Assembly (NCBI RefSeq): GCF_022045235.1
Contig: NW_027266264.1
Coordinates: 46,624,001 to 46,688,000, forward strand
Direction: 5' to 3'
DNA: 64,000 bases
DNA from: Haliotis cracherodii
Taxonomy: Eukaryota
Of this stretch, positions 6,772-61,122 are shown piece after piece. A program made the translations under genes and the position numbers. The notes beneath the pieces were generated by a model. That model ran no database searches, was not told the origin of the DNA, and saw only the letters and a list, made by a program, of their open reading frames with translations. Position 1 is the stretch's first letter. Each line of letters opens with the position of its first letter.

Positions 6772-7848
6772 CTAAGCATGGTATGATCTCGTGGACCTTG
6801 TGCCCCAACTCTGACTGATGTCGTTTGAAGAATCAGTCATTGACTGTTGTATGTTTGGATACAGGTAGTTGCAGGAAGGGTCAGGTATGCTTAAACTGGG
6901 TGAGGGAACTTGTGGCGCGTATGTTCCGGCCAGTGGAGAGCTTCCCGGGGGAGAGCTGGAGAGAGGGGAACCGGTCAGAGAACTGATGATACTTCTGGTG
7001 TTGTAGTAGCCGGCTGTAGGAGGAGAGTAGCCTGTAGGAGATCCCATGGTCCAGATACAGGGGTCCGGTTTGCCTATTGTGCTGTAGGGGTGTGTCTGGG
7101 TCAGTCCCGGGGGTAAGGAGCCGTGACTCAGGGGGTTGAAGCTTGTGTAAGGAGATGGACCCCCATACAATCCCAATAACTGTCCGTAAGGACTGGCAGG
7201 ATGGAATGAAGGATCTTCTCGACGTTGCTTTTGTGCGGACTTGAAACGCTTAGAACGACGAAGGAAACTGCCGTTACCAAACATGTCCCCACAAGATGGA
7301 TGCAGAGCCCACAGGTTACCCTTGCCTGGTTTCCCCGGGGGTCGGGGCACCTTGACGAAACAGTCATTGAGGGAGAGGTTGTGTCTGATGGAGTTTTGCC
7401 ATCTCCGTTGGTTGTCTTCGTAGTATGGGAATCTCTTGACGATGTAGTTGTAGATGTCTTTGAGAGTCATCATGCCTGTTGTAGAACTCTCGACGGCCAT
7501 GGTGATGAGAGCCACATAGGAATAGGGAGGCTTCTTGTTGGAAAATCGTCTGTCTTGTTGTGAGAGGGTGGATGTTCCCGAGAAACCGTCCCCTTCTCCG
7601 TTCGAGGATACCGATGAGGTAGGAGACGGAAGAATGTTGTCATAATTTGGAGATCCTTGTTGCGTGTGACCTGATCCATGTGTGATCAGGGATCTGACGT
7701 CTTCTCCCTCAGTAGCTCCAGATGTCTGAGACACGACTGGGACGGAGTGTTGTGAAGATATGGAGTGATCAGATGGAAGAGGTGTCATCTGCTGTCCCAT
7801 GAAGGGAGATGTACCTGGGACATACTGGAACATGAATGGGTTATACAT
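6772..7848 (-). CDS. foxAB: Forkhead transcription factor, FoxAB-like (copy A), intronless, 358 aa
   Basis: Full forkhead domain (~7240-7536) [24 protein letters not shown]...[58 protein letters not shown]. The GMMTL, KGNxWALHP and [16 protein letters not shown] residues fit FoxAB better than FoxA or FoxB as I recall those families. Minus-strand AATAAA at ~6488-6493. Confidence 0.85.
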
Positions 7849-7931
7849 GATTCCTGGCTCAATGTGCAGCAGGTGAGAAATGTATTACCTCAGTAGGCAG
7901 AGGAATGTTTATCCCCCTCGTCACGGCGAGG

Positions 7932-8104
7932 TTTATAGTCCCTGGCCAGATAATCCCCTCAACACGCGCTTTACAGATCTCAATTGCCTCTAGATTAGGT
8001 AGCCATTGATATGTTAATTGGATTGGCATAGGTAATGGGTGTTTCCCCTTAAACATAATTAGACACTGTCAGTCACTATTGGCCAGGACAATAACCCCGC
8101 CTCC
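7932..8104 (-). promoter_or_regulatory. FoxAB copy A core promoter
   Basis: TATAAA 7932-7938, TAATCCCC 7951-7958, CCAAT 8078-8082, GGCGGGG 8095-8101. Confidence 0.65.
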
Positions 8105-8896
8105 AGGTAGCAATGCTTTGTTACTGCCTTGAGACCTCCATGTTACATGAAGATGACACAATCATAAGTAGGTTTGTAATGCTCATATCAACTGTACACT
8201 CATACAAAAGCCCTGTTCAAGCATAATGGTGCTGAAAAATGCGAGCGAATGTTATTTTAGTATGATAGTAGGTATATAACCTCAAACTTGAATATGGAAG
8301 TGATGTCCAATATAACTGGCAATCGTAGCGGGGTATTGTTGCTTTGCAAGACGCATATGTGAATGTGGCCGTAAGGAATGGCTCAAGCCGCAGCAGCTGC
8401 AATTACGTACTACAGATTGTTATAAGACTTATCCCACCCCCGACCCCCGACGTTATTTGTACTAGATATTTTTAAAAGTTATTTTTTAACCTTGTATTTA
8501 ATATTGAGTATACATGACTGGAGTCTCGTAGACTTTAATGACCGGATATGCAATACACATATTGTAATATGTTTTATTGTGTTCTATCACTGTGCAGTAT
8601 GTGACACTATGCAATATGTGGTAATCCTTATTATCTTCTTCTTCAATGTTAAACATGTGATTTGGCCACAGATAGGGGCAATGCTTCAGAACTACTTCAT
8701 ACTGCCGACTGTTCCGCTCTCATTCGCTGACTAGCTTAAAATTTAGTTGAACGCTGATAGAGTGGTCCCAGACGAAGAGTCCAAGATATTTCATCGCTAC
8801 GGAGAATGTCATGGTTTCTTCCACGATTTAAATTTGATGGCATATACTGATCAAAGGATTTACTGGAGGCATGTGTTTGAATTCTCTATATACTAG

Positions 8897-9058
8897 GAGC
8901 GAGTGAGTTGTATTTTAAGCAGCCTTTAGCAATATAGCAATATCGCGGCGGGGGACAACAGCAATGGGCTTCACACATTGTACCCATGTGGAGAATTGAA
9001 CCAGGGCATGCGACGTGACGAGTGATCACTTTAACTACTGGGCTACCCCACCGCCCCC
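8897..9058 (-). mobile_element. Short tRNA-derived SINE (family 3)
   Basis: GGGGCGGTGGGGTAGCC head, B-box-like GGTTCAATTC, (CACT)n-like tail; related copies at 10520-10683, 29972-30138, 35682-35780 and 45922-46080. Confidence 0.75.
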
Positions 9059-16206: not shown

Positions 16207-19200
16207 GTATGTGCTCGTCCACTGATTTTTATATCATACTATCTTATTTAAGTTTTTGTTGGTTGTTTAAGTCGCGCTCAGCAATAATCCAGCTGTATGA
16301 TGGTGGTCTGTAAATAATTGAGTCTGGACCAGACAATTCAGTGATTGAAATCATGAGCATCGATCAATGCAATGGGATACAATGACATGTACCAAGTCAG
16401 CGAGCCGGACCACCCAATCCCATTGGTTGCCTCTTACGACAAGCATACCCGCCGTTTACGGCAAGTTTTGGTAGCTGAGGATGTATTCTACCCTGGATCT
16501 TCACGGTATTAGGATCTATTACTGTACATGTATCACCTTCTTCAACAATCTCACTCTAGTAACTGTCAAATTCAAGTTAAGGAACAATAACACACAGGGG
16601 CATATGCTCAAAGGGCTATTATATTCCCGGTCAATTTATCAATGTGAATTCAACAATCATTCTCAGCTTCCTGGAGAGTATACAAGCTGCCTGTTACTTT
16701 TAGGCGCTAGAAGGTTAACAACCACATTGCAATCTCATCCCACCCATTCACTGCTGGGTGGACAGAGGCACATTGCACAAAGTCACTTTGCCCATGGAGA
16801 CAACACATGTAAGTGTGGGGCAGGACCAAAGCACTAGAAAATCTCAGGAGCCAAACTGCTGAAATGTGGTCACCCATCGCAGCGAATGTTGGTTACCTTC
16901 ACCTTATTTGGGACCTGTGCGCTGTGCAGTTATAGTAATAGAGGGAATCTGAATCCTATTATATATGAGACCACCTCCCTGGCCTAGTGGTAAAGTGTCT
17001 GCCCTGAGGGCAGAAGGTCAGGGATTCGATCCCTGGTCATGTTATACCAAAAGATGTTAACAGATGGTACTTGTTGTTAACTAATCTCGCGATCTGCATT
17101 AAAGTGCTAAAACAAGGACTGGTATGCTGTGTCTGAGTGGGGTATTTGTTTTAAACTGTGGCATGGTATCTCAAAGGGATGGCACTATAAAATCGGTGTT
17201 AGTCCGGCATACATGCAGCCACATACATGCAGCCACTCACGCACATGTAAGGGCAATAATCTTGAATGCAGCTTTAAACATGCATTTCTTCTCACCTATT
17301 TCTTATGTAGTCACATGGAAATAGGTAAATTTGAAACATGTACGGACTGTAGACTTGTATTTGTTGCCATCTGGTATTGAAGTGATATGATTATTATCCC
17401 TCGCCACGAAGTGGAAGGGGGATATAGGAATGGGTGCCGTCCGTCTGTCCGTCCGTCACATTTCGTTTCCGGAGCAGATCTTGAAAACCGTACCATATTT
17501 CTTCACCAAACTTGGCACATAGATAGATCTAGTGGTGAACTGGTGCCTTTTGATAGTTTGGGATTTTAATTTTTTATATTTTTTTGAGTTTCCATGGCAA
17601 CGACTTTGATTTAGACTGAAAATGGCGGTAGTCCTCGTTTCCGGACCAGATCTTGAAAACCGTACCATATTTCTTCACCATACTTGGCACATAGATAGGT
17701 CTAGTGGTGAACTGGTGCCTTTTGATAGTTTGGGATTTTAAAAATAAATATTTTTCGAGTTTCCATGGCTGAAAATGGCCGTAGTCCTAGTTTCCGGACC
17801 AGATCTTGAAAAACGTACCATAATTCTTCACCATACTTGGCACATAGATAGGTCTAGTGGTGAACTGGTGCCTTTTGATAGTTAGGGATTTAATAAAAAA
17901 ATATTTTTCGAGTTTCCATCGCAACGACTTTGATTTAGACTGAAAATGGCGGTAGTCCTCGTTGCCGGAGCAGATCTTGAAAACCGTACTATATTTCTTC
18001 ACCATACTTTGCACTTAGATAGGTCTAGTGGTGAACTGGTGCCTTTGGATAGTTTGGCATTTTTAAAAACGATATTTTTCGAGTTTTCATGGCAACGACT
18101 TTGATTTAGACTGAAAATGGCGGTAGTCCTCGTTTCCGGAGCAGATCTTGAAAACCGTACTATATTTCTTCACCATATTTTGCACATTGATAGGTCTAGT
18201 GGTGAACTGGTGCCTTTGGATAGTTTTGGATTTTTTTTTATAAAGTTATTTTTCGAGTTTCCATGGCAACGACTTTGATTTAGACTGAAAATGGAGGTAG
18301 TCCTCGTTTCCGGAGCAGATCTTGAAAAATGTACTATATTTCTTTACAAAAAGGCCCAGTGAACATAGTTCACAGGAGCTAATGCATTGCACACACCCGA
18401 CATGTCATATTGGTGGGGGATGTGAGTATTTCATGCTTGTTTTTGTGTGTTTCAGGAGAAGGACAAAGATGTCCACAAGCTGTCCACAGCTGCATCATGG
18501 GGCACCATCATCCAGTGCCTGTCCCAGCTTGCCGCTGCTGAGAAGATGTACATGTCACTCACCTTCCTCGGGCAGAAGAGATTTAATCCTATTGGACGAG
18601 CAAGAGAGGTATGTTGTACCTAATCATGCTAGCAATTGATCTTCTCTGATTAATCAGGGAGAAACATAACGACATGTGGCCATATCATATGGGGGCACAT
18701 TATCCTGTAGGCATCCCGTCAAAATAGTTGATAGCAAAAAACATTCATGTTCTTTTGAGTAGTATATCTACTGGGTTATTGCACCATACACACGATATAA
18801 GTTTTACCTCACTGGATGCAACAAAGTGCTTTAGTTTCCCTTCCTCATACAAACAGACTACTGGAACAAAGAGACAGTTGAAACAGACTACAGCCACATG
18901 CCTTGGCATCCACGAGTTATCCACCTCCTGCCAGCTCAGCCATACAAGATTGTTGACAGCTCCTTTCTGTGTTTGACTGGCAACAGCGACATCTTGTACA
19001 CATGTCTAATACTGCTTTGGATCCATCACCATCGCTAGGTGCTCTGCCTTACTCAAACAGTCTTCCTGGGACCCGCAATTGATGCACCAGCCTTTGTCTG
19101 ATCCGGCTCTTTTCAACAGCCAGATCCTGACAGTTACAAGGAGGCCCAGAGTTGAGACGCTAACCAGCAGCAGTTCTGTCTCCATATTAACATGGAGCGT

Positions 19201-22200
19201 CTGCTGTCTTCCCAGCTCTCTCAACAGCGAACATCATTTGCTGGACTGGTCTACAAGACCCCCCCCCTCCCCATCGTGGACGCTTTCCGGTGGGGACCGT
19301 CGACAAATGTGACCTCCTTGAGATGCCCGACATCTGGCAACTCTCTCTGCCAGTTGTCCCTGTTCAGCCATCTACAGGTAGGTGGGAGACTTCAACAGTA
19401 CTGGGGAGGAATTGGTGGCTGCTGCAGGATCCGTTCGTCATCCGGATCCTCCTCCATGGGTTCAACCTACAGGTTCCACCACTACCATTGGAACCTTAAA
19501 ATCGTCCTCTAGATGTACCAGCTGTACAGGCCAATATCGACTTACTGATTGCCAAGAATATGGTGGAAATTTTGGATGCCAACTCCATCCATCCAGGATT
19601 CTTTCCCCCCCGTCTTCCCATAGCCCCAAAAGGCTTCATCCAAACTATGGATGATTCACAATCTGGCGCTCTTCAATCTTCACTATCTCACGCCTCCATC
19701 ACATTTTCAGATGATCTCCATCTGTTCCCAGCGCCACCGCATCAGTCTGGACCTACAGGATGCCTACCTGCACGTTCCCATTCATGCAACGATTCCTCCA
19801 CTTCATCTTCCAGGCCAGCACTTTCAGTGGAAAGTACACTCATTTGGAATTTTCACGGCTCCGTGGTTATTCATGCGTATCACCAAGCCCATTGTTGGGT
19901 TCCTTCACTGTAGTTGGATTTGTTTCTCTCTTTGAGCAGACTTTTCAAGACCCAATCGTCCATACCCCATGGACTGGGTGCTTCACCCAGAGGGCTTCCC
20001 GTTCTTGTGCGATCGCCTTGGAACTCCAGAAGTTGATCTGTTGTCCAGGGTTAGCAACCACCATACCAGTTGCCAGTGTATGTGTCTCCAGTCCCAGGCA
20101 AAGCTGCTTGGGAGGTAGACGGCCTCGCTGTGTCCTGGGTCAGCCTAAGTGTGTATGCTTTTCTGTCCCCACTTATTCTCCCCCAGGTCATTCACAAAGT
20201 AGCCCTCATCTTACTTGTTCCAGGCCTTCTGCTTCACTTCTTGGTCACCTTGCTGGTTCCATAATTGCAACCTAACTTGCTGCCCTCAGTTCGGTCTTGA
20301 TGACTGCTAGTGACTGTCCTCGGTCCCTGCACTTTGTGCCATGGTCTGAGGATTTTGATTGGAGGATGAGAATAAGAAGTTCAATCCTCCAGCTTGGCAT
20401 TTAGATCTTGTTTCTCGTGACTGCTTGCACCTGCCTCGTTTGAAGATCTCACCTTGAAGACTTGCTTATTCCTGGCACTTGCCATGGAGACCAGGGTTAG
20501 CAAGATTCATGCCCTAGATGTGACCCAGGTCCGGTTCAACAAGCAACCTCACGGCCTGGTTCACCTTGTTCTTTGCTGGTACTTTGTCGCCAAAAATCAA
20601 CTGCCTGGCCAACCTGATCGGCAGTTTCATGTCCCTTCTCTTTTGGAGATCGTTGGTCCAGATGATAACATGAACTCACTCTCTGCCCGGTTCGAGCTCT
20701 CCGACAATATCTTCAGGTGTCTCAGCAGCATCGTTGACAGTGCCTTTGGCTTCATTTCGCTATCATGAAAGCCTATGGTCGTGCTAACTTACCTCCTCCA
20801 ATCAGCATGAGATCCATGCCCTGTCTTCTCCACTGGCCCTCCATCCTGACGACATCATGGAGGGATGCTTCTGGTCCTCTATATCTGTCTTCGCAACCTT
20901 TCTGTGGAAGACGTTGAGGGTACTCATAGATTTGGTCCACTTGTCCTGGCCTAGCACCTGACCAACCCCTGATGCCATACTAGGAGCTGCTACCTTGTTG
21001 TCGTCTGAAGGGTTCCTTGCCTGGTACTTCTGACAGTAAGCCCATCTTCCATGTCAGTCAAATAAAGCACTGTGTAGCATCAGTTAAGGTAAAACATGAG
21101 CACTTCTGATTCAATGCAATGTTGTATACTTACCTGATGCTACACCTATAGGCCCACCTGGACTGGGTCTGCCTCCTCCGCCACTGTCTGTTTGGTGTCA
21201 CTGTCTACTCTGCGCCTGCTGTTGTACAGTGAAGAATATGAGGGAGTAGGGGGCAAGGGGGATTACTTGTGGATGCCGAGGCATGGGTTGTGGTGTCAAC
21301 TGTCTCTTCATTCCAGTACTCTCTGTTTGTATAAGGTAGGGGAGTTAAAGCACTGTGTAGCGTCAGGTAAGTATAACAACCTTGCATTTATTCAGAATTG
21401 CTCATTTTGAAACAATACACATTTCAATACTTATTGAGCATACTGTGAAAATGAATATAATATATTGCTGTCCTTTGAAGATCCGGGTTAGAATTGGTCT
21501 TCAGCAAGCCCATGCTTGTCGTAAGAGGCAACCGGATCAGGTGGTCAGACGTGGATGATGCATGTCATCCCAATTGCGTAGATTGATGTTTGTGATATCA
21601 ATGACTGGATTGTCTGGTCCAGACTTGATTATTTACTGCCTGTCGGCATATAGCTGGAATATCGCTGAGTGAGGCGTTAAACAACAGACAAACAAAGAAA
21701 CTTTATATATGGCTGTTACTTCCTCCCTGATTTCTCCTTTTGCCCACAGGTATACGTGATAAGAAATCTTTGATTTCGACTCAGTGTAGCGTCTTTAGAA
21801 ATATCTAGGGTTATACCCATCTTCCTGAGGCAAGGGAGTTAACTGACTTTAAAAGTCCAGTTTCCATCCTTGCCAAACTAGGCTGGAATTTCAGGGCCTT
21901 GATTCTAGTGCCATGAGTGGCTATTATGAATTATGTCCCCCCTCAGATTCCACCTCTCATATCATTTGTTTCAACCAAAATGGTTGTGACCATTCAATCT
22001 CATCAATAATACAGATCTTTGTTGTAATAAAACTGCTTTTCCCTCGCAAAGTGCATCATATCACTTGAGCACCTTGATTAAAAACATGAAAAAATTGGAA
22101 AATATGTGTTGACGCCCAGCTGAGGGTACACATGCTCTGCAAATCCTGGTTCGATATTTGCCATGTGGATTATGATGCGGGTGTCGATATCTTGTTAGTC

Positions 22201-25200
22201 CAGCAAAAACATCTCCATAATTATCCCCCGCCGCGCGAAAGCGCGAAGCGGGGGATATAGTATTCACGACCGTCCGTACGTCCGTCCGTACGTCCGTACG
22301 TCCGTCTGTACGTCCCACCTGTTTGTTGCCGCGATATCTCAAGAACTAAACACTGGATTGTCTTCATATTTGGAACTATGGTGTATATACAGACTCCGCA
22401 GACACCAGTCGGTTTTGGTGACCTTGACCCCATTTTCAAGGTCACAGCAGGCAAATCTGTTTTTGGAGTTGGAAAACGGTGTTGCCACAATATCTCAAGA
22501 ACTAATCGCTTGATTGTCTTCATATTTGGTACTATGGTGTACAGGCGGGGGATATTTCGTCACTCTGTGACAAATACTTGTTCCAGCCTAGTTTGGCAAG
22601 GATGGAAACTGAACTTTTAAAGTCTGTTAACTCACTTGCCTCTGGAAGAAGGGGACCGCCTCCGTGGTCTTGTGGTAGAGCGTCGGCCCGGAGAGCGGAA
22701 GGTCCAGGGTTCGATCCCGGGCCGCGTCATACAAAAAGACGTTAAAAGATTGTACTTGTTGTTACCCTGTCTGGCGCTCGGCATTAAGGGGCTAAAACAA
22801 GGACTGGTCGGCTCGGAGTCAGTATACTGTGTCTGAGTGGGGTATTCATGTTAAACTGCGGCATGGTATCTCAGTGAGCTAGCACTATAAATCGGCATCA
22901 GTCCGGACTAGTACAAGCAGCCACACACACATACACGTGCATGCACGTCGCTATATAAGTGCAATAATCTTGGACGCGACGTTAAACCCAATTTCACCTC
23001 ACCTCACCTCTGGAAGAAGGGTATACTAACCATATTGAAAGGCTATATTTATATCAGTAGAGACCCATAGAGCTGCTCAGTTAAAGTGATGTCCACAACC
23101 ACCACCACCACCACCACCAAGGGTCTAATTTTAAGATGAAACTGATTTGGTTCTTCCCTCCACAGAACCTGCGCAACAACTACCAGTTCCTGGTTCAGGA
23201 GTTCCAGCGTATTGACAGCTTGTCCCAGACACCAGTGACTCTTCGCTCGGACCTTGACATTCTCCTGGCACATCTGAGTGGTCAGCTGAGTCACTACCTC
23301 ACAGCCAGACAGAGGCTCATGGATCTGTATCCTGGAGACTGTTTAGTGGAGAGATTTAATCTTAGGGATGTAAACCTCAGTTGTATTGTGAATCTATTAG
23401 AACATGTAAAATGATGTCTACCTATTTTGATAATATTTAGTATCAGGTATAACTAGCAGTTTATGTCTACTTTAGGACAAACATGTATCTCCTAGCCCAG
23501 ATTACTCTCTCTGCTATGTTCCCAAAACAGACAACATACTTGTGCCATTTTGTTATGTTCCTAAAGTCATTGCATGGGCACCAATTGTTTTTCATCTTTA
23601 TACCCAAATGTTATACTATATGAGTATCAACATGACCATCTCAGGAGGCTTCCTAGTGGTAATCCTGCTTAATGTGAATGTAGTTAGTTTATGCACTCAT
23701 CAGTGTTATATGATTGTGTTGTCCACTTAACAAAACAAGATATGAGCAGATATCTTCAGTTGCTGTCCACAGGAATGTGAGTTTTGATGACCTGGTTACT
23801 ATGGTTACTGACATAATACAGGCTCACAGTCGGGGCTTCCACCATCCACTCCTCAGCCCTCTCAAGTCATCCTTCAGGTAGGGTTAGAACCATTGTCTGA
23901 ACACTCAAGAACAATAGTACATCATGTTAGAATCACAATGTTGCCACCACATTGATACATCATGATACAAAAGATTTTAATGCTGTCTCCATATGTGATG
24001 CTGTCTCCATATGTGATGCTGTCTCCATGTGTGTGATGCTGTCTCCATATGTGATGCTGTCTCCATATGTGATGCTGTCTCCATGTGTGTGATGCTGTCT
24101 CCATATGTGATGCTGTCTCAATATGTGATGCTGTCTCCATGTGTGTGATGCTGTCTCCATATGTGATGCTGTCTCCATATGTGATGCTGTCTCCATGTGT
24201 GTGATGCTGTCTCCATATGTGATGCTGTCTCCATGTGTGATGTTGTCTCCATGTGTGTGATGCTGTCTCTATATGTGATGCTGTCGCCATGTGTGTGATG
24301 CTGTCACCATGTGTGTGATGCTGTCTCCATATGTGATGTTGTCGCCATGTGTGTGATGCTGTCGCCATGTGTGTGATGTTGTCTCCATATGTGATTCTGT
24401 CACCAAGTGTGTGATGCTGTCTCAATGTGTGATGTTGTCTCCATATGTGATGTTGTCGCCATGTGTGTGATGTTGTCTACATGTGTGTGATGCTGTCTCC
24501 ATGTGTGTGATGCTATCTCAATGTGTGATGTTGTCTACATGTGTGTGATGTTGTCTACATGTGTGTGATGTTGTCTCCATGTGTGATGTTGTCTCCATAT
24601 GTGATTCTGTCACCATGTGTGTGATGCTGTCTCAATATGTGATGTTGTCTCCATATGTGATGTTGTCGCCATGTGTGTAATGCTGTCTCCATGTGTGATG
24701 TTGTCTCCATGTGTGTGATGCTGTCTCTATATGTGATGCTGTGGCCATGTGTGATGCTGTCGCCATGTGTGTGATGTTGTCTACATGTGTGTGATGCTGT
24801 CTCCATGTGTGTGATGCTATCTCCATGTGTGTGATGTTGTCTCCATGTGTGTGATGTTGTCTACATGTGTGATGTTGTCTCCATGTGTGTGATGTTGTCT
24901 CCATGTGTGTGATGTTGTCTCCATGTGTGATGTTGTCTCCATGTGTGATTCTGTCACCATGTGTGTGATGCTGTCTCCATATGTGATGCTTTCTCCATGT
25001 GTGTGATGCTGTCTCCATGTGTGATGTTGTCACCATGTGTGTTATGTTGTCTCCATATGTGATGTTGTATCCATATGTGTGATGTTGTCTCCATGTGTGT
25101 GATGTTGTCTCCATGTGTGATGTTGTCTCCATGTGTGTGATGTTGTCTCCATGTGTGTGATGTTGTCTCCATATGTGATTCTGTCACCAAGTGTGTGATG

Positions 25201-41805: not shown

Positions 41806-41989
41806 NNNNNNNNNNNNNNNNNNNNNNNNNNNNNNNNNNNNNNNNNNNNNNNNNNNNNNNNNNNNNNNNNNNNNNNNNNNNNNNNNNNNNNNNNNNNNNN
41901 NNNNNNNNNNNNNNNNNNNNNNNNNNNNNNNNNNNNNNNNNNNNNNNNNNNNNNNNNNNNNNNNNNNNNNNNNNNNNNNNNNNNNNNNN
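41806..41989. other. Assembly gap (N run)
   Basis: Run of Ns. Confidence 1.
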
Positions 41990-42428: not shown

Positions 42429-43502
42429 TCAGGGATGTTGTTGCAGGTTTCTGAAAGAGGGTACAGCACTGAATGACTGTCGTGGATGTAGCGACACACA
42501 GTGACGGAGGTTTTCATCAATAGTGGATCTTGGGCAGCTCCCTGGACGCATGTAGGCCCTACCCAGGGGCGAGCTTCCCGGGGGAGAGCTGGAGAGAGGG
42601 GAGCCGGTCAGGGAGCTGTTCATGCTGCTGGTGTTGTAGTAGCCAGCTGTAGGAGAGTAGACTGTTGGAGATCCCATAGTCCAGACACAGGGGTCCGGTT
42701 TGCTTGTGTTGCTGTAGGGGTGTGTCTGGGTCAGTCCCTGGGGTACATGGACAAGGCTCACGGGGTTGAAACCTTGGTATGGCGATTGACGATCATAGAA
42801 ACCTGAATGGCCATAGAAATTGAGACGTTGGACGGTGGCTTCATCTTGTCGCTGTTTGTGTCCTGACTTGAAACGTTTAGAACGACGGAGGAAACTGCCG
42901 TTACCAAACATGTCCCCACAAGAAGGATGCAGAGCCCACAGGTTACCCTTGCCTGGTTTCCCCGGGGGTCGGGGCACCTTGACGAAACAGTCATTGAGGG
43001 AGAGGTTGTGTCTGATGGAGTTTTGCCATCTCCGTTGGTTGTCTTGGTAGTAAGGGAATCTCTTGACGATGTAGTTGTAGATGTCGTTGAGAGTCATCAT
43101 GCCTGTTGTGGAACTCTCGACGGCCATGGTGATGAGGGCCACATAGGAATAGGGAGGCTTCTTGTTGGAAAACTGCCTGCTTTGTTGGGAGAGAGTTGAC
43201 GTTCCTGGGACAGTGTCTAGACTTGGGTCCTCTTCCTCGTCGTTTTCGGAGCTCATTGAGGAAGATGGTGAAGGCAAGGTGTTGTGATCGCTGTCTGGAA
43301 CTCGATGCTGTTGAAGAGGCTCCCTCATGTCTCTTGGAGAGAGTTCAGGCCTGACGTCAGCTTCACGTAAAGGTACATATGACTCGACCTGGAACTTGGA
43401 CGAAGGAGGAAGTTGTGTTGCATATGGAGGTGTCATCGTCACTGCCATAGCTGGGTCGGCAACGGCATTTCCATACTGAAATGTTGCTGGATTGAACAAC
43501 AT
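42429..43502 (-). CDS. foxAB: Forkhead transcription factor, FoxAB-like (copy B), intronless, 357 aa
   Basis: Same forkhead domain. N-terminus nearly identical to copy C; the post-domain segment (SGHKQRQD) resembles copy D. Confidence 0.85.
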
Positions 43503-43578: not shown

Positions 43579-43776
43579 TATATATCCCCGTACTAATCCC
43601 CCAAGAAAACATATAATTACAAACGTGGATTTGTCCAAAAATAAATTGGATAGCTAATTGTTTATGTACAATTGATTGGACCAAAACCACATCGACCTGC
43701 TTGAGGTGTGTCTAGATAACCCAGTGGGCACTGTTACGAATTGCTATTGGCTACTGGCTCACAATAACTCCGCCTA
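43579..43776 (-). promoter_or_regulatory. FoxAB copy B core promoter
   Basis: TATATA 43579-43585, TAATCCCCC 43594-43602, CCAAT 43746-43750, GGCGGAG ~43768-43774. Confidence 0.65.
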
Positions 43777-45989: not shown

Positions 45990-46020
<31 letters not shown>

Positions 46021-48460: not shown

Positions 48461-49552
48461 TTACATAATGTTAGTGTACTGGTTTCCCGGGGGTTGCATG
48501 GACTTAGTAGCACTGGGGAGTGACTGATGAACACTAGGGTACAAATAGTCATAGGGATTTCTAGACCTGTCAAAGCTGGAAGATGAACATTGAGGCATGT
48601 AGGTTCCAGCCAGGGACGAGCTTCCCGGGGGAGAGCTGGAGAGAGGGGAGCCGGTCAGGGAGCTGTTCATGCTGCTGGCGTTGTAGTAGCCAGCTGTAGG
48701 AGAGTAGCCTGTAGGAGATCCCATGGTCCAGATACAGGGGTCAGGCTTGCCTGTTGTGCTGTATGGGTGTGTCTGGGTTAGTCCCTGCGGTAAGGAGCCG
48801 AGACTCAGGGGGCTGAAACTTGTGTAAGGAGATGGGGCTCCATACAACCCCAATAAATGTCCGTAGGGACTGGCAGGATGGAATGAAGGATCTTCTCGAC
48901 GTTGCTTTTGTGCGGACTTGAAACGCTTAGAACGACGAAGGAAACTGCCGTTGCCGAACATGTCCCCACAAGAAGGATGCAGAGCCCACAGGTTACCCTT
49001 GCCTGGTTTCCCCGGGGGTCGGGGCACCTTGACGAAACAGTCATTGAGGGAGAGGTTGTGTCTGATGGAGTTTTGCCATCTTCGTTGGTTGTCTTCGTAG
49101 TATGGGAATCTCTTGACGATGTAGTTGTAGATGTCGTTGAGAGTCATCATGCCTGTTGTGGAACTCTCGACGGCCATGGTGATGAGAGCCACATAGGAAT
49201 AGGGAGGCTTCTTGTTGGAAAACTGCCTGCTTTGTTGGGAGAGAGTTGACGTTCCTGGGACAGTGTCTAGACTTGGGTCCTCTTCCTCATCGTTTTCGGA
49301 GCTCATTGAGGAAGATGGTGAAGGCAAGGTGTTGTGATCGCTGTCTGGAACTCGATGCTGTTGAAGAGACTCCCTCATGTCTCTTGGAGAGAGTTCAGGC
49401 CTGACGTCAGCTTCACGTAAAGGTACATATGACTCGACCTGGAACTTGGACGAAGGAGGAAGTTGTGTTGCATATGGAGATGTCATCGTCATTGCCATAG
49501 CTGGGTCGGCAACGGCATTTCCATACTGAAACGTTGCTGGATTGAACAACAT
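48461..49552 (-). CDS. foxAB: Forkhead transcription factor, FoxAB-like (copy C), intronless, 363 aa
   Basis: Same forkhead domain. N-terminus as copy B; post-domain segment ([19 protein letters not shown]) as copy A. Confidence 0.85.
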
Positions 49553-49628
49553 TTTGTTATCTCAGAAAACCCAGTATGTTATAACTGAGTAACAGTGAGA
49601 CTGTATGCCTTCACATTTGTCGGCGGAG

Positions 49629-49808
49629 TATATATCCCCGTACTAATCCCCCAAGAAAACATCTTACAATTCCAATTTGCTCCCCGAGAGAGAATCTATT
49701 GTTATATTGTAAATTGGACTGTACTACCCTCGGTGAATTACAGGAGGTGTGGCCAGTGTGTAATGCGCCCGGATGCTATTGGCTACTGGTAAATATAAGT
49801 CCCGCCTA
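49629..49808 (-). promoter_or_regulatory. FoxAB copy C core promoter
   Basis: TATATA 49629-49635, TAATCCCCC 49644-49652, CCAAT 49778-49782, GGCGGG 49801-49806. Confidence 0.65.
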
Positions 49809-52800
49809 CCTACTTACAGGCCAATCAGTTGTTCCACATTGATAGTAACCTCTAGCCTGCATAATGAACATGTATGATACTGGGAAAAATGTCTACCTAC
49901 TTCTCTTCACCATAGTTAAATTAATTTTCCACAAAACCATAAGCCGAATAAAATATATATGGCGATGAATGTGTTTCTACATTAGATGAATAACACAAAG
50001 GAATTTTGGCCACAAGGCAACACTTGTAATTACATAAGTACACATTTTGATAAAGGCTTTCCTACCCCTCTTTTCACTGAGGCAGCTCAACCTATATCCA
50101 TAGGGTTCCAGTAGCCCTCGGGGATCAAGTACATGTCAGGTTCTAAAGCTTAAGTCAACACTGATGTCATAACCCTGTAGAACAAATTACATTTTACCAA
50201 ATATATGTCTAGATGATAAAAGTAAAGGTTAAGGCCAAATGAACAAGACGTATTCTACGTATCAAAATATGTTAGATTGTTTGTCTTGATTCACGACACG
50301 TATCTCGAGCTGGGTATCATAATTGCAATGTTCTTGTAAATTAGATGCTGTAAATGGATACACTACAGCCCACTATGAGAGGAGGGATACATGCAATACA
50401 TTTATGATCAAAGGATCGTCATATCTTTGTGTCGAACTATAATGAGTTATGGTGACCTGTATGTAGATTTTGAAACCAGCGACACCTGGTGATATGCTTA
50501 GTGGGATAGGTTGGGCATATGTATGTGTTGTAAGTGAATGGTCCAAAGTGACATAACCACCACATGTCGGATACGTCACGGGCCATGGAAGCGGTAATCG
50601 TATCGGGGAGACGTAGCGATTCGTTAAAAGGTTGTCTCTACACTTATTGACATCACAACAATTCAGTATCGATCATCACTGAAATAACACCCAGTCTGTG
50701 TCAGCAGTTGAGTGGTATCAAGATCCTGTACAAGTACACCTCCTACATACCCCTTTGTCTGAATAATGTACGAGAATGAATGATTAAAAGCAAATTAACA
50801 GGCCAATATATTGATATAGGTGTTGCTCAAGTTTTCATTTGTTACAAGGTATTTTCCATTTGTTGTTGTCAGTGGAATGATGCTAATAATTTAAATTATC
50901 GCTATAGAATCTATTCGTCTTCTAATATTCAAGCTATGACTTTGTATGGACGAAGGGGATATTTTAGGCTAAACATGGACATTGCAAAAGTACTCAAATG
51001 CTCAGAGAATAGTGATGTGGCATGTTGGTGAAGGATGACGCAAGTAATCGTATCGGGGAGCCTTAATGACTCAGTTAATGTGTTGTCTCTACACTTATTG
51101 ACGTCACAATAAACACACAACATCACACTTCACGGGTTGTCGGCATCGATCATTACAGAGACAACTCATCATCTGTGTCAGCGGTTCACTTAATTAAATT
51201 TAGATCCCTTCATTGAACAAATGATGTTGTACAAACTGTGAAATTGTCCCTACGTTATAGTGTATACAGTGTGTCGGAATATTTCTACTCTGTAAATAAT
51301 GAGCTAGATTAACACTTCTTTATTTAGAGGTCTATATTATTCAAAACATTTGTATGGTCATATTAATGTTGTACACCCAGGGGGAAGGGATAGCATTACA
51401 GGTAGTAATGCAACATCATTGCAGTTTTAGTTGAACAACAGATATTTCCTCATATATCGATTGCTTCTTTTATAGCACATGTGTGTATTATTGCACACCT
51501 GAAAGTGTTACAGAGATTGGCTTCTCGGAAAGTGGAATACCAGTTGATGAAACCATCTGGTAAAGGTGACAAACTACATGTGATTGTCCCCCAATGCTGT
51601 TCATTACATGGGGTTTTGCAATTATGCTAGAGGTGTTCGTGAACATGTTAGAAAAACACCACATGCTTTGATGTAGCCGCCCAGGTAACAGGATTTAAAG
51701 GAAACTGGATTAAGATTCGAAGGCCCAGCCACATATAGAAAATCTATTGTTTTATCAAATACCGATTATGACTGTTGTTCATAGCAAGTACAATATTGAT
51801 GCAGTTATTGTTTTCTTACGCTTCCTAATTCACCGTCAGTAGCACGGCCGCCCTTTATCAACTGGCTATTGACTACCTTATTTCCAAAATGGATTACTGT
51901 AAAACTGCTTTTCTCCCTTTCTATCACCCCGATACTGAAATCAGAGTAAGTACGGTGGCGACAGCGGCAGGGGACAATGCAGAGGCCAGACGCCAGAATC
52001 CAATATCACAGAAGACCGAAATATAAATCTTGTTTTATTTCTTATGTGTGACATCAACATTATTTACGGCCTCTTTAAGGATGTTCAAAAAATTGTACAA
52101 GCTTTAACAATATTAACCCAAATTTTAATAATGATCACTCCCAGAATAGAATCCGACAACGGAAATGTCGGACAAGTCCATTTTACGAACAGGTGGATTA
52201 AGTTTGTTTTTCCCCGAATATTCTCACAATCCTTACGTCGATTGTCTTCACATTTTCTCCTCATACCAATTGTCATATCTCTCCCGCTTTAGTATGCGAT
52301 CGTCCGGCCACTGCGTTTGTCTCGCAGCCCAGCTACATCTATGGGGAACAACTTGCTGGACATTTCCCTCTAAAAAATAACGTCGTCCAATATATGACGT
52401 CATCAAATTGCGAGCACATATTCAAATCTCCAGAAATGAAATAATGATCGAACAATGTTTTATCGTGAAAAATACCACTCTTCGTTCTTCATTGCCCTTT
52501 GCGATTAATCGCGTAGCTATCATATATATCCAAGAAAAATGTTTTTTGAAGTTGAATATACCATGATTAGGAATGTTTAATTCATGTTACACTAATCACT
52601 GCGGAACAGTGTACGTCGTTTGTTGGTGAGGGAGAAACAAACCAGAAGAACCCTACAGTACAGCAGGGTTAATGATAAAGCAGGCATCAACTCAGCATTG
52701 AGCGTTATCATATTTCGATAACCGAAATATAAATTGAAAAACAAAAAGGCAAACTATCATTGAGCGTAATTTGGTTTCCAATTCCAATTGTGTCCTTCAA

Positions 52801-54189
52801 ATGTGAAAGAGACCTACTAGACCTAAGTAACCCGAGGGTGGGCGTGGACTGTACTACAGATTGTTTGTAAATATGATGGCGTTTATTCATATACACATAA
52901 CTACCATATTTTAATCACCTATTTTGACTGAATAAATTTATCATATCCCATACACTGAACAACACACACACACTGAAGTATCATAGTATTACATGGTCAA
53001 AGAACACTACAATGACATCTACGAAACACAAGCCGGGCAAACAAACTACATCACAGAGTGTTCGTAAGACACTGAAAAACTTCAATTAATTAGATACACA
53101 TCTCACCTTCCATGATTTCACAGACGCTACACTATTGCTGTGAAATCCCAGATAGTAATGCCTTACAGACGGCAGTTTCCAGATTGTGAATCTCATTGTG
53201 CTTGACGTGCTGTCAAGCTGTAAATATCCATGTCATGTTCTTGAATTTGTTAGAATTAAGACAATATGCCGCTACAGCCATTTTCCAATTTGAAATCCAT
53301 TAAAATTGACTGAAGTCCTTTTCCTGTTAGAATTTCTTTTTTAAATATTGAAAATTCTATTTTAAATGTCTGTATATATCTGTAGACAACTTACATGTGA
53401 TTTTATGTGAATGCATTATGTAGTTGTTACTGTCAATTAATTTGCTTAATAACATTGAACACAAAGTACTGACACAAGCAGATGAATGGCCGGTCACATT
53501 TTTTGGACGAAACATTTGAAGAATTGCAAGACGAATGTTACACAGTTTCGCCGGAGCTAGAATCATGTAAGCCGGTCAAGCAAAAGTAATAGTCTGTGAC
53601 CAGTCACTGTAAGGTCATTGTCGTGGGCTAAAGTCTAGTATAAATATTGAATCAGCCAGCGGTATTCACGTAACAATCGCCAGGTGTCGCTTCTGCAGAC
53701 TGTTTCCTTGATGCCAGATCATGATGTAGGTTCGTCGAGTTACTACACAGCTGTAGGAATCTGTGTAGCTCGTAGATGTAGCTACTACCAATACCACTAA
53801 TGACGAATACGTTTCATTGACAGACAGGCATGTCTAACCAACCTACCCGACAAGACCTTACTTAACAGGGATTAAAAACGATTGAGTGATCACATATATA
53901 TATATAAAATGTACTTTTTTCTATTTACATATTATCGAGTGATCACACATTTCTGTTCATAAACGGGACAAACATTCAATAACACTAGGTGTGTATATGT
54001 GGTTGTATACAGTGTCTCAATTCACTTGTCACAATAGTCAATACGTAAAGGTTCAATATCAACTGATAGTTAATGGTATATGTTGCTATTTGCGTCGATT
54101 CTGTAGCACCCGGGTGAAAACGTACATATGGATAGAATTGCTCAGAGGAACTTCGAAGTCCTATCGAAACTGGGAGTGGCCTCACCCAG

Positions 54190-54622
54190 GGGCCAGCTTC
54201 CCGGGGGAGAGCTGGAGACAGTGGAGCCGGTCAGAGAACGTGTGATGCTGCTGAGACGTTGTAGTAGCCGGCTGTACGAGGAGGGTTAGACTAACATTTA
54301 GTCTCTGAAATCTTGTATTACACAATATCCGTCTTGACTCTAAAAATAAAACAATATTTCCCTATGCTGTGGAATAGAGCTAGCTACAGCTGGCTAGACT
54401 TGCTTTTGTATGCGTTTCTAGATTTATTTATTTTTCATAGAATTAGACCCTGGGGTAAGGAGCTGAGACTCGGGGGTTGAAACTTGTGTAATGAGATGGA
54501 CCTCCATACAACCCCCATAACTGTCCGTAGGGACTGGTAGGATGGAATGAAGGATCTTCTCGACGTTGTTTTTGTGCCGACGGAGGAAACTGCCGTTACC
54601 GAACATTTCCCCACAAGATGGA
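54190..54622 (-). pseudogene. Truncated FoxAB-like pseudogene fragment
   Basis: Holds only the end of the forkhead box ([10 protein letters not shown]), followed by a 19-nt frameshifting deletion relative to copy C. Then the EDPSFH..SPYG segment, a replaced internal segment (~54283-54445), and the TAGYYN..LTGS..SSSPPGS segment (54190-54280). Confidence 0.85.
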
Positions 54623-56284: not shown

Positions 56285-56449
56285 NNNNNNNNNNNNNNNN
56301 NNNNNNNNNNNNNNNNNNNNNNNNNNNNNNNNNNNNNNNNNNNNNNNNNNNNNNNNNNNNNNNNNNNNNNNNNNNNNNNNNNNNNNNNNNNNNNNNNNNN
56401 NNNNNNNNNNNNNNNNNNNNNNNNNNNNNNNNNNNNNNNNNNNNNNNNN
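56285..56449. other. Assembly gap (N run)
   Basis: Run of Ns. Confidence 1.
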
Positions 56450-58713: not shown

Positions 58714-58889
58714 TATGTTCAATAATAAAATTCACGGAAGACATGGTGTGATTAGCCACTGCTCGACGACGAACACATGGAGATATAATAATGTATGTAC
58801 AAGATAATATTCCTGTAGTAGTTACTGTAGACACCGGTCTGCTGTGAATTTTATGATATCCTACAACCTATTGGGTCTCTAATATCTAC

Positions 58890-59575
58890 CATACCGAGGA
58901 CGGAATATTAAAGATATGATAACATGATGTTTGAGCCATACCGAGGAGGGAATATTGAAGCTATTATAACATGATGTTTCAGCACTACCGAGGAGGGAAT
59001 ATTGAAGGTATGATAACTTGATGTTTGAGCCATACCGAGGAGGGAATATTGAAGCTATTATAACATGATGTTTCAGCACTACCGAGGAGGGAATATTGAA
59101 GATATCATAACATGATGTTTGAGCCATACCGAGGAGGGAATATTGAAGCTAGTATAACATGATGTTTCAGCACTACCGAGGACGGAATATTGAAGCTATT
59201 ATAACATGATGTTTCAACACTAGCGAGGAGGGAATATTGAAGCTATTATAACATGATGTTTGAGCCAAAACCGAGGAGGGAATATTGAAGCTATTATAAC
59301 ATAATGTTTCAGCACTACCGAGGAGGGAATATTGAAGCTATGATAACATGATGTTTGAGCCATACCCAGTAGGGAATATTGAAGCAATTATATCATGAAT
59401 TGTTAGCCATACCGAGGAGGGAATATTGAAGCTATTTTAACATGACGTTGAGCCATACCGAGGAGGCAATATTGAAGCTATCATCACATGATGTTGAGCC
59501 ATACCGAGGAGGGAATATTGAAGCTATTATAACATGATGTTTCAGCCATACCGAGGAGGCAATATTGAAGCTTTA
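58890..59575. repeat. About 47-bp minisatellite (TACCGAGGAGGGAATATTGAAGCTATTATAACATGATGTTT...), about 14-15 copies
   Basis: Direct reading; unit ends alternate between GAGCCA and CAGCAC. Confidence 0.95.
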
Positions 59576-60015
59576 AAGTGGGTAGTTTCAGCGCATGGAG
59601 AACACACACACGTACAACATCCAGCAGTGGGAGATAACACGCTGAACAAATTGAGATGCCATGATGATGTACAAAAATGACATCGAGATATGTTTCACAA
59701 AATAGTACTTAAGTTACAACACCACTACACAAGAATAGACAATTCTGTGATAAAGCATATTTATTTTTGAATGTATATTATACATATATAACAATAATTA
59801 TATAACTTATATCAAAGCATGAAAGAGTACATTTACAATTCAAGTCACTTGTGATATATGCATAGACATCAGTCGTTGCTGTGTCAACCAAGTTTATGTA
59901 TATTATGATTATATAGTGGCGTACCTGTACGCCTTTTACATCAATGACAAGCAATTTGATAGCACTATTATCGATGTTTTTGATCCTGAGATGATATGAT
60001 TCTCAGCCAATGCCT

Positions 60016-61122
60016 TCACTTTGACATACCATATGAATACATAGGCTGTGAAGCTCCTGTGAATGACTGACACAACTGAGGATAGGAATAATTATATAAA
60101 TTTTGGATAGCACTCGAGCTCGGTGATGACACTTGTGGCATATATGTCCCAGCTAGAGGCGAGCTTCCCGACTGGGCAGACAGCATATGTGGTATGTGAG
60201 GTCCTGGTGGAGAGCTGGAGAGAGGGGAGCCGGTCAGGGAGCTGTTAATGCTACTGGCGTTGTAGTAGCCGGCTGTAGGAGAGTAGACGCTAGGAGTTCC
60301 CAAAGTCCAGGTACTTGGGTCAGACGTGCCTGCTGTGTTGGGTGTGTGTGTCTGGGTCAGTCTCTGGGGTAAGGGGCTAAGATTCAGGTTGAAACCTTGG
60401 TAGGGGGACGGGCCCCCATAAAGACCAAACTGTCCGTATGATGTGAACCGCTGAATCAGTGCGTCGTCTTGTCGCTGTTTGTGTCCTGACTTGAAACGTT
60501 TAGAACGACGAAGGAAACTGCCGTTACCGAACATGTCCCCACAAGAAGGATGCAGGGCCCACAGGTTACCCTTGCCTGGTTTCCCCGGGGGTCGGGGCAC
60601 CTTGACGAAACAGTCATTGAGGGAGAGGTTGTGTCTGATGGAGTTTTGCCATCTCTGTCGGTTGTCTTCGTAGTAAGGGAATCTCTTGACGATGTAGTTG
60701 TAGATGTCGTTGAGAGTCATCATGCCTGTTGTGGAACTCTCGACGGCCATGGTGATGAGGGCTACGTAGGAATAGGGAGGTTTCTTGTTGGAAAACTGCC
60801 TGCTTTGTTTTGAGAGAGTTGATGTTCCCGAGACAGTGTCAATGAGTAGTTCGTCATTGCTGTCCTTATCTGTACACGGTGACGATGATGGTGAAGGCAG
60901 AGGGACGTTATCGGGCAATTCTGCCTGTTGTCGATCTGTTTCTCCGAGGAACATGTCATCTATTCTGTTCGGCGTTCCTGGGGGCGCAGTTGTCTCCCTT
61001 GTGAGTGCCACTCTTGAAAATGTTTGAGGCAACATGTACGACGGCAACACTGGTGTCTCACCCTGCATCACAGCATCCCCAGTCACGTTGCCATACGGAG
61101 ATACACTTGTATGATTCAACAT
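60016..61122 (-). CDS. foxAB: Forkhead transcription factor, FoxAB-like (copy D), intronless, 368 aa
   Basis: Same forkhead domain (NRQRWQ variant), unique N-terminus, shared [23 protein letters not shown] block. Confidence 0.85.

What the first reader, a model, noticed from the sequence alone, without database searches (positions are those of the whole stretch)
6772..61122. The paralogs are mosaics: homogenised forkhead box, shuffled flanks
Seen: a ~95-nt core of the forkhead box (acaggttacccttg...gagttttgccatct) is identical in all four copies including synonymous sites, and the rest of the box differs at only a few positions. Yet the N-termini of A, B/C and D are barely alignable apart from an LPSP(T/S)SS motif. 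C shares its N-terminus and leader with B but its post-domain segment ([19 protein letters not shown]) with A, 41 kb away across KICS2. B shares SGHKQRQD with D. A second homogenised island ([23 protein letters not shown]) is common to all copies, and the extreme C-termini all differ. Inference: old duplicates under segmental gene conversion, which generates combinatorial effector regions on one DNA-binding domain.
Basis: partly seen in the sequence, partly recalled or inferred. Interest (0 to 1): 0.8.

Follow-up and report, generated by a model that had tools for sequence, protein, structure and literature searches.

The report
Abalone FoxAB cluster homogenised by gene conversion
Ten neighbouring copies of one forkhead (FoxAB) regulator gene in black abalone keep almost the same DNA-binding domain because the copies repeatedly overwrite one another there, while their ends stay different; this is a clear and apparently undescribed example of a well-known process.

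Summary
The window (Haliotis cracherodii, C1:46.62-46.69 Mb) carries four intact intronless forkhead ORFs and one decayed relic. They belong to a 10-gene FoxAB cluster spanning about 100 kb.

Synonymous divergence (dS) is 0.03-0.17 in the box, 0.13-0.39 in the mid island, and saturated in the N- and C-termini. A 98-nt core is identical in nine copies.

Gene C is B-like up to the box (142 of 143 informative sites) and then A-like (tract 48708-48938). Gene B carries a g2-like patch (42823-42906). PHI, breakpoint and AU tests are all significant.

Proteins from three other abalone species show eight orthologue types that predate the genus. Even so, the box carries species-specific residues shared by all derived paralogues. 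Box trees follow species; C-terminal trees follow orthologue type. That is concerted evolution by interlocus gene conversion, and it is still active: near-identical twin copies differ only inside the box, at states found in other paralogues.

The same C mosaic occurs in four independent assemblies, so it is not a chimera.

The "combinatorial effector" role is untested. The scan had already noted box-limited conversion on the adjacent window of this cluster. Verdict: a new member of a known kind.

The parts
6772..7848 (-). Gene A, 358 aa. Intronless FoxAB-derived paralogue and youngest member of a ~7.9 kb tandem triplication (g3, g4, A). Box at 7240-7533.
   Evidence: ORF; Pfam Forkhead; triplication at 98.2-99.3% identity
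42429..43502 (-). Gene B, 357 aa. Box at 42867-43160.
   Evidence: ORF; Pfam; orthologues P0016, P0121, P0003
48461..49552 (-). Gene C, 363 aa, the mosaic copy. Box at 48917-49210.
   Evidence: ORF; Pfam; the same architecture in P0140, P0122, P0002 and P0123
60016..61122 (-). Gene D, 368 aa. Box at 60490-60783.
   Evidence: ORF; Pfam; orthologues P0142, P0011, P0018
48984..49081 (-). 98-nt core identical in all nine derived copies (also at A 7307-7404, B 42934-43031, D 60557-60654). 82 nt of it (48991-49072) are identical in g1 too.
48708..48938 (-). A-like conversion tract inside C: 51 of 57 informative sites are A-like, bounded by B-like sites at 48974 and 48692.
   Evidence: the C-specific version is present at single-copy depth in two independent samples
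48974..49662 (-). 5' block of C homogenised with B (B: 42924-43612). It covers the leader (~110 bp), N-terminus, pre-box and first part of the box.
   Evidence: blastn 92.4% block ending at 49662/43612; 142 of 143 informative sites B-like; B and C N-termini also co-vary within H. asinina
42823..42906 (-). g2-like conversion patch inside B: 22 of 22 informative sites. Present only in the H. cracherodii and H. rufescens B genes.
54178..54622 (-). Relic copy. It is 5'-truncated and has frameshifts and stops. It keeps the last ~15 box codons, an A/C-type post-domain segment (82% identity) and part of the mid island.
1..180 (-). Start codon (window 8-10) and leader of paralogue g4, whose body lies left of the window. 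98.9% identical to A's leader at 7839-8018.
18456..35647 (+). KICS2 (C12orf66-like) exons splitting the cluster between A and B.
41806..41989 (.). Assembly gap, 440 nt 3' of B's stop codon. It touches no family ORF.
56285..56449 (.). Assembly gap, intergenic between the relic and D.

Best explanation
The four genes belong to a tandem cluster of ten intact, intronless FoxAB-class forkhead genes in Haliotis cracherodii. One slowly evolving copy, g1, keeps the ancestral form. The nine derived copies arose before the living abalone species diverged.

Non-allelic (interlocus) gene conversion repeatedly copies short tracts between the derived paralogues. It is centred on the forkhead box, where identity is highest. 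This keeps the box nearly identical within each species, synonymous sites included.

Tracts that run out of the box homogenise neighbouring segments within smaller groups of copies. These groups are: leader plus N-terminus for B and C; the post-domain segment for A/B/C, for g9/g10, and for g2/D (plus B in two species); and the mid island more widely. The extreme N- and C-termini are too diverged to pair, so they evolve as ordinary orthologues. The mosaics are the visible outcome of this process.

Shown here: the duplicates are old, the conversion signal is real, it is limited to the core, and it is still active. Inferred: the molecular route (heteroduplex repair after misaligned pairing) and any selective benefit.
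For: 1. dS by segment across 10 copies: box 0.03-0.17, mid island 0.13-0.39, N- and C-termini mostly above 1 or saturated.

2. Changing relationships along the gene. B and C have dS 0.03 in the N-terminus but 1.13 in the post-domain segment. The post-domain tree groups C with the A-types at 100/100 and B with g2 at 98/97, and the AU test rejects B+C at p = 2e-16.

3. Breakpoints. Two-breakpoint chi-square values are 158.7 and 119.1, reached by 0 of 500 shuffles. The tracts are bounded on both sides: C 48708-48938 and B 42823-42906.

4. Recombination statistics. PHI gives 0 of 2000 permutations in every partition, third codon positions included. 32 of 66 pairs of informative box sites show all four gametes.

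5. Cross-species proteins. Box position 14 is V in all derived copies of Hc, Hr and Hb and I in all 13 Ha copies. Position 32 is V in Hc and Hr and I in Hb and Ha. The post-domain pools also carry species-specific states. On segment trees the box needs 20 changes of the orthologue-type label (shuffled mean 22.6) but only 8 of the species label (shuffled 21.1). The C-terminus needs 6 type changes (the minimum) and 19 species changes.

6. Ongoing activity. The twin units g3 and g4 are 99.31% identical over 7.8 kb. All 4 of their CDS differences fall in the 294-nt box and none in the other 783 nt, and each is a state present in other paralogues. The E/Q residue at box position 39 sits in different paralogues in Hc and Hr. 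The Hr C post-domain segment is identical to the Hr A-type.

7. Synonymous sites in the box are free to change: g1's box differs from the others at dS 0.35-0.46 outside the shared 82-nt tract.

8. GC3 is 0.64 in the box and 0.62 in the mid island, against 0.45-0.48 in the flanks, which fits GC-biased conversion.

9. Between paralogues, homology stops at the edges of the CDS or leader; the flanks are unrelated.
Against: The classical comparison of paralogue dS with orthologue dS in the box was therefore not made, and the cross-species evidence rests on a few amino-acid positions and on protein trees.

I assigned orthologue types from the termini, so their clustering in the N- and C-terminal trees is partly circular.

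Short-read contigs break at the box, so they do not physically link the two halves of C. No long reads were offered.

The mid-island motif, and much of the box, are also under strong protein-level constraint. Higher GC3 could reflect codon preference instead.

The gene models are ORF calls. RefSeq models of some copies are N-terminally truncated or end in a different 3' exon (the g2 models P0017 and P0145), so some C-termini may be spliced differently.
Confidence: 0.88

Rival explanations
1. No conversion. The box and mid island look homogenised only because purifying selection, codon preference or a local low mutation rate also freezes synonymous sites.
For: The box and the mid-island motif are strongly conserved as protein, even in other molluscs. 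GC3 is raised there.
Against: Constraint cannot change which copy is the nearest relative along the gene. It cannot produce species-specific residues shared by all paralogues. It cannot concentrate the differences between near-identical twins inside the most constrained segment. g1's box shows that synonymous sites there do diverge, at dS 0.35-0.46. PHI is significant on third positions alone.
Confidence: 0.03
2. The mosaics are assembly artefacts: reads from similar paralogues were joined wrongly, or copies were collapsed.
For: The identical core of 98 nt or more can mislead assemblers. Two gaps lie in the region. Short-read contigs break at the box and bridge nothing.
Against: The same C architecture (B/C-type N-terminus, A-type post-domain segment, C-specific C-terminus) is encoded in independent assemblies of H. 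rufescens (P0140), H. rubra (P0122) and H. asinina (P0002, P0123). C's post-domain segment is not a copy of A's: it differs at 16 of 184 nt. It is present with 0 differences at single-copy depth in two independent samples, beside the A-type version at about 2-3 times that depth. C's C-terminus is joined to its unique 3' flank in one clean 1.49 kb contig. The gaps touch no ORF.
Confidence: 0.03
3. Young partial duplications. Only the core was copied recently, and each copy recruited unrelated flanking DNA as new N- and C-termini, so box dS gives the true age.
For: Homology between paralogues ends near the borders of the core. The termini are barely alignable.
Against: Each N- and C-terminal type has clear orthologues in four species, so the copies predate the radiation of the genus. 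Short motifs shared in the termini (M.(F)NP..FQY, LPSPSSS, an acidic run) point to old common descent.
Confidence: 0.02
4. Unequal crossing-over between misaligned paralogues, giving reciprocal chimeras with copy-number change, made the mosaics instead of non-reciprocal conversion.
For: Unequal exchange clearly operates in the cluster: g3, g4 and A form a ~7.9 kb tandem triplication, and the number of A-type copies varies (3, 3, 3 and 5 across the species).
Against: The C and B patches are internal and return to the gene's own sequence on both sides. The flanks of B and C are unrelated beyond the leader. A crossover chimera would carry one parent's flank on each side.
Confidence: 0.06

Closest known systems
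Concerted evolution by interlocus gene conversion in tandem developmental transcription-factor paralogues (for example hexapod engrailed/invected, from my own knowledge; mammalian PRD-class ETCHbox homeobox genes, PMC8208926; long-lasting conversion in mammalian gene pairs, PMC2720389)
   Same: Old tandem paralogues. Conversion is limited to the conserved DNA-binding region. Paralogues are more alike within a species than orthologues are between species. The flanks diverge normally, giving mosaic divergence along the gene.
   Different: This is a forkhead (FoxAB) array of nine converting copies plus one largely exempt ancestral copy. An unrelated gene (KICS2) splits the array. The post-domain segment forms several nested conversion pools.
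FoxAB class of forkhead genes (O. fusiformis foxAB-1 and foxAB-2, C. teleta foxAB; PMC9539403, PMC4407770)
   Same: g1 and, more distantly, the derived copies share the FoxAB forkhead domain. They also share the pre-box motif [10 protein letters not shown] and, in g1, the post-box motif HVSSYGHFSLYG and the C-terminal QY...LR tail. The genes are intronless.
   Different: Published spiralians have one or two copies, whereas abalone has ten. The derived copies have replaced the ancestral N- and C-terminal motifs and changed several box residues (V for I, NKK for [14 protein letters not shown] for RAPGRPGKGNY).
Lineage-specific tandem expansions of Fox genes in Spiralia (foxQ2; PMC9539403)
   Same: Tandem expansion of a clade I Fox class in molluscs and annelids.
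   Different: A different class. Conversion-driven homogenisation of the box is not mentioned in that paper (0 occurrences of 'gene conversion').

Membership tests
Forkhead (winged-helix) domain proteins, Pfam PF00250 | A full-length forkhead domain scoring above the curated cut-off | tested here: met
   All four ORFs score 125-127 bits (cut-off 27) over profile positions 1-87 of 88
FoxAB class | Closest full-length relatives are genes assigned to FoxAB by published phylogeny | tested here: met
   P0082 and P0044 match O. fusiformis FoxAB-1 and FoxAB-2 as named in the supplement of PMC9539403. They group with g1 and the mollusc orthologues and share motifs outside the domain.
FoxAB class | Distinct from FoxA and FoxB, which exist separately in the same genome | tested here: met
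   L011 carries a FoxB-type domain almost identical to Owenia FoxB. L013 carries a FoxA-type domain.
FoxAB class | Monophyly with FoxAB in a phylogeny of all Fox classes | not tested
   No all-class tree was built here. The class assignment rests on the two rows above.
Concerted evolution by interlocus gene conversion | In the converted segment, paralogues within a species are more alike than orthologues between species | tested here: met
   Met at protein level: species-specific box residues shared by all derived paralogues, and the box tree follows species (8 changes against 21.1 shuffled) rather than type (20 against 22.6).
Concerted evolution by interlocus gene conversion | Phylogenetic incongruence and significant recombination signal along the alignment | tested here: met
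   Segment trees and AU test p = 2e-16; breakpoint test 0 of 500; PHI 0 of 2000; four-gamete violations in 32 of 66 pairs
Concerted evolution by interlocus gene conversion | Non-reciprocal patches bounded on both sides, with flanks unchanged | tested here: met
   C 48708-48938 and B 42823-42906 are bounded by own-type sites. The flanks are unrelated.
Concerted evolution by interlocus gene conversion | GC enrichment of converted tracts (GC-biased conversion) | tested here: inconclusive
   GC3 is 0.64 and 0.62 in the box and mid island against 0.45-0.48 in the flanks. Codon preference in conserved segments could give the same result.
Assembly chimera | The mosaic is absent from independent data | tested here: not met
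   The mosaic is present in three other species' assemblies. C-specific segments are present in two independent samples. Direct bridging by long reads was not testable because no long-read run was offered.

The most novel reading that the evidence does not exclude
The arrangement is maintained by selection as a modular regulator array. Conversion keeps one DNA-binding specificity across nine paralogues. Their distinct, orthologously conserved N- and C-terminal regions give different regulatory outputs or partners. Tracts leaking out of the box occasionally create new module combinations for selection to test. Such an array might act in early spiralian patterning, where FoxAB is expressed in annelids.
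Probability: 0.15. Interest if true: 0.7.

Novelty: new member of a known kind. Interest (0 to 1): 0.5.

Why it matters
FoxAB is a poorly understood Fox class that vertebrates have lost and that is normally present in one or two copies. A ten-gene abalone array is a lineage-specific expansion of a developmental regulator, and it deserves expression and functional study.

For molecular evolution it is a clean natural example in which domain-limited conversion, nested conversion pools, a largely exempt ancestral copy and a decayed relic can be compared across several sequenced species.

There is also a practical consequence. Box-based phylogenies and automatic names for these genes are misleading: NCBI names them E1-, E3-, B1-, B2-, D1-, D2-, A4-, lin-31- and FD4-like. 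Short-read assemblies and RNA-seq mapping will confuse the copies unless the terminal regions are used.

Tried and rejected
No DNA of the other species was obtained, so no orthologue dS and no GENECONV or RDP analysis across species.
- **AU tests on the N-terminal segment** (clades {C, A-types} and {B, g2}) were uninformative, with p = 0.15-0.24. Moving a very long branch onto a very short one costs little likelihood. For that segment I rely on distances and site counts.
- **Read laying**: Logan contigs break at the box, so they cannot prove or disprove linkage across it. No long-read run was listed. The runs guessed to be RNA, from two related species, cover only 48332-49662. That fits transcription, but the RNA label is the tool's guess, and the laid contigs may include paralogues.
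- **My first twin test** used about 10 differences in 4 kb. The full 7.8 kb comparison gives 37 mismatches, so enrichment against the whole unit is weaker (about 1.4 expected in the box, 4 seen). The stronger statement is that all 4 CDS differences fall in the box and none in the other 783 nt, and that all are states of other paralogues.
- **Pfam scan of long ORFs between A and B** found nothing for KICS2. The family search by exon found it.
- **Literature searches** found no description of this abalone cluster.
- **A frameshift as the cause of B's different C-terminus** was considered and rejected. B and C align in frame there, and each has orthologues in other species.
Full report
**Where and what.** The window is G000:C1:46624001-46688000 of a 1.18 Gb genome. 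Exact protein matches on a contig of the same length (89,134,964 bp) are named Haliotis cracherodii, the black abalone. The two quoted motifs occur four times each on the + strand, against about 0.5 expected by chance. Each pair lies inside an intact ORF on the - strand: A 6772-7848 (358 aa), B 42429-43502 (357 aa), C 48461-49552 (363 aa) and D 60016-61122 (368 aa). Each ORF has one full Pfam Forkhead domain. A fifth, partial copy lies at 54178-54622 (-). It is 5'-truncated and frameshifted, has stop codons, and keeps an A/C-type post-domain segment at 82% identity.

**Assembly gaps, checked first.** The N runs are at 41806-41989 and 56285-56449. The first lies 440 nt 3' of B's stop codon. The second is intergenic, between the relic and D. 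No family ORF or homology block touches either gap, so no reading frame depends on them. Only distances measured across them are estimates. I did not try to fill them.

**The cluster is larger than the window.** A six-frame search of the whole genome finds ten intact copies and two relics within C1:46.596-46.697 Mb. I call the ten g1, g2, g3, g4, A, B, C, D, g9 and g10, in genomic order. Window bases 1-180 are the start and leader of g4. g3, g4 and A form a ~7.9 kb tandem triplication at 98.2-99.3% identity. KICS2 exons (PF09404, in profile order, + strand) lie at window 18456-35647, between A and B.

**Class.** The closest relatives outside Haliotis form one conserved gene family found across molluscs, annelids, nemerteans and brachiopods, with one or two copies per sampled species (two in Owenia). 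Two of them (P0082, P0044) match the sequences that the Owenia Fox paper names FoxAB-1 and FoxAB-2 in its supplement (PMC9539403). The abalone genome has a separate FoxB (L011) and a FoxA-type gene (L013). In a full-length tree all Haliotis copies form one clade (100/99), and g2-g10 form a clade (100/100) sister to g1. g1 evolves slowly and keeps the ancestral motifs outside the domain. The cluster is therefore an abalone-lineage expansion of FoxAB. I did not build a tree of all Fox classes.

**The observation, quantified.** Nei-Gojobori dS by segment was computed for the four genes and for all ten.
- N-terminus: saturated for nearly all pairs, except B-C (0.03) and the triplicates (0).
- Box: 0.03-0.17 among g2-g10, and 0.35-0.46 against g1.
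- Post-domain segment: low only within three groups (A-types with C 0.22; g9 with g10 0.22; g2 with B 0.43), and otherwise about 1 or more.
- Mid island: 0.13-0.39.
- C-terminus: above 1 or saturated.

A 98-nt run is identical in all nine derived copies, and 82 nt of it are identical in g1 as well. Outside the CDS the paralogues are unrelated, except for about 110 bp of leader shared by B and C and about 170 bp shared by the A-types.

**Conversion tests within the genome.**
- Segment trees disagree. The N-terminus joins B and C at a distance of 0.018. The post-domain segment joins C to the A-types (100/100) and B to g2 (98/97). The post-domain data reject a B+C clade (lnL difference 48, p-AU 2e-16).
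- Triplet scans show C as B-like at 142 of 143 informative sites up to the box, A-like at 42 of 47 sites in the post-domain segment, and B-like again in the second half of the mid island.
- The densest A-like tract in C is 48708-48938 (51 of 57 sites), bounded by B-like sites on both sides. B carries a g2-like patch at 42823-42906 (22 of 22 sites). Two-breakpoint chi-square values of 158.7 and 119.1 were reached by none of 500 shuffles.
- PHI is significant in every partition (0 of 2000), including third positions alone and the box alone. 32 of 66 pairs of informative box sites show all four gametes.
- The patches are internal, which points to conversion, not crossover chimeras.

**Conversion is still active.** The g3 and g4 units differ at 37 of 7808 aligned positions. 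Within the 1077-nt CDS they differ at four positions. All four lie in the 294-nt box and none in the other 783 nt (probability about 0.006 if the four were spread evenly along the CDS, my calculation from these counts). All four are states present in other paralogues. This is the opposite of what constraint alone would predict.

- Eight orthologue types are recognisable in all species by their N- and C-termini.
- The box nevertheless carries species-specific residues shared by all derived paralogues. Position 14 is V in Hc, Hr and Hb and I in all 13 Ha copies. Position 32 is V in Hc and Hr and I in Hb and Ha.
- The post-domain pools also co-vary within species. Examples are QLFG in Hb A, B and C; a 4-aa deletion shared by Ha A and B; and KQHCNN in Hb g9 and g10.
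- On segment trees, the C-terminus needs the minimum of 6 changes of the type label and 19 of the species label (shuffled mean 20.2). The box needs 20 type changes (shuffled 22.6) and 8 species changes (shuffled 21.1). The post-domain and mid segments are intermediate.
- I assigned the types from the termini, so their clustering there is partly circular. The loss of type signal in the box, and its replacement by species signal, is not circular.
- Differences between the sister species Hc and Hr point to recent events. The E/Q residue at box position 39 sits in different paralogues in the two species. Hr C's post-domain segment equals Hr A's, whereas Hc C differs from Hc A at 5 residues. g1 carries the derived K at box position 68 only in Hc and Hr.

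**History of the mosaics.** C has the A-type post-domain segment in all four species. B has it in Hb and Ha, but a g2-like segment in Hc and Hr. So A, B and C form an old post-domain conversion pool, and B of the North Pacific lineage is the copy that received a foreign patch. B and C N-termini are homogenised within each species, while their C-termini remain distinct and orthologous.

**Assembly chimera?** One read-laying run on 47000-51000 used two independent DNA samples of the same species and two runs guessed to be RNA from related species.
- Contigs break at the box, as expected for an identical core longer than the assembler's word length, so they do not bridge it.
- They do show C's own post-domain segment (48713-48896) with 0 differences at single-copy depth, beside a version with 16 differences at about 2-3 times that depth (the A-types).
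- They also show C's C-terminus continuous with its unique 3' flank (47158-48647).
- The stronger argument is that three other species' assemblies encode the same mosaic.
- The RNA-like runs cover only 48332-49662, which fits transcription of this gene type. The RNA label is the tool's guess.

**Rivals.**
- Synonymous constraint fails on the incongruence, the species-specific shared residues, the twin test and g1's diverged box.
- Young partial duplication fails on the cross-species orthologue types.
- Unequal crossing-over explains the A triplication, but not the internal patches.

**What is not shown.** Nothing here shows that the N-terminal, post-domain or C-terminal regions are effector domains, or that shuffling them is adaptive. 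All ten ORFs are intact, and the types are retained in all four species while two relics decayed. That argues the copies are functional, but not for what purpose. GC3 is higher in the homogenised segments. This fits GC-biased conversion but is not decisive. The gene models are ORF calls, and some RefSeq models are N-terminally truncated or use another 3' exon.

**Known or new.** Domain-limited concerted evolution in tandem paralogues is well known (for example PMC2720389, PMC8208926). I found no description of this abalone FoxAB array or its conversion. The scan's own notes already record box-limited conversion on the adjacent window of the same cluster. I confirmed two of those notes here: a 278-nt identical run between g2 and g3, and the 82-nt tract shared with g1.

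Noticed in passing
window 23980-28560: A ~4.6 kb tandem-repeat array (copies 83-90% alike) with strong strand asymmetry (AT skew about -0.5, GC skew +0.23). It fills the KICS2 intron between the exons at 23741-23884 and 28565-28690. The 929-aa ORF at 25416-28205 (-) lies wholly inside it and has no Pfam match, so it is probably spurious.
   Followed up: partly
G000:C1:46613215-46632018 (window 1-8018 and the DNA to its left; L031, L032): g3, g4 and A form a ~7.9 kb tandem triplication (g3-g4 99.31% over 7808 bp; both about 98.2% to the A unit). A-type copy number varies between species (3, 3, 3 and 5).
   Followed up: yes
g1 (L007, outside the window); matching tract in C at window 48991-49072: The otherwise divergent ancestral copy g1 shares an exactly identical 82-nt tract (helix 3 to wing 1) with all nine derived copies. 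In H. cracherodii and H. rufescens only, g1 carries the derived K in PGKPGKG where H. rubra, H. asinina and outgroups have R. This suggests a conversion into g1 in the North Pacific lineage.
   Followed up: partly
window 37059-37937 (-): A 292-aa ORF with weak ApoL and DUF4079 matches, both below Pfam's cut-offs (18.5 and 20.5 bits). It sits inside the Fox cluster between KICS2 and B.
   Followed up: no
RefSeq proteins P0013, P0016, P0017, P0127, P0145, P0014, P0015, P0018: Public gene models of several cluster members start at the internal Met of MA(V/I)ESS and so lack the N-terminus and the first helix of the box. The g2 models end in a different C-terminus (…VMDTVKMSRITNTIETQ), which implies a 3' intron. 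NCBI's names for members of this one family span nine different Fox or lin-31 labels.
   Followed up: partly
window 47000-47267: A very high-copy repeat, with summed contig depth hundreds of times the single-copy level and many variant junctions, lies 1.2 kb 3' of gene C. It is also present in the RNA-like runs of related species.
   Followed up: no
window 49662 / 43612: The 5' end of B/C homology coincides with the 5' end of coverage by the RNA-like contigs. One such contig runs on for 85 nt unlike the window. It could come from the B orthologue, mark a transcription start, or reveal an upstream spliced exon. Unresolved.
   Followed up: no
window 34636-35206: A minisatellite (copies 80-87% alike) that begins inside or at the end of the KICS2 exon at 34549-34650.
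   Followed up: no
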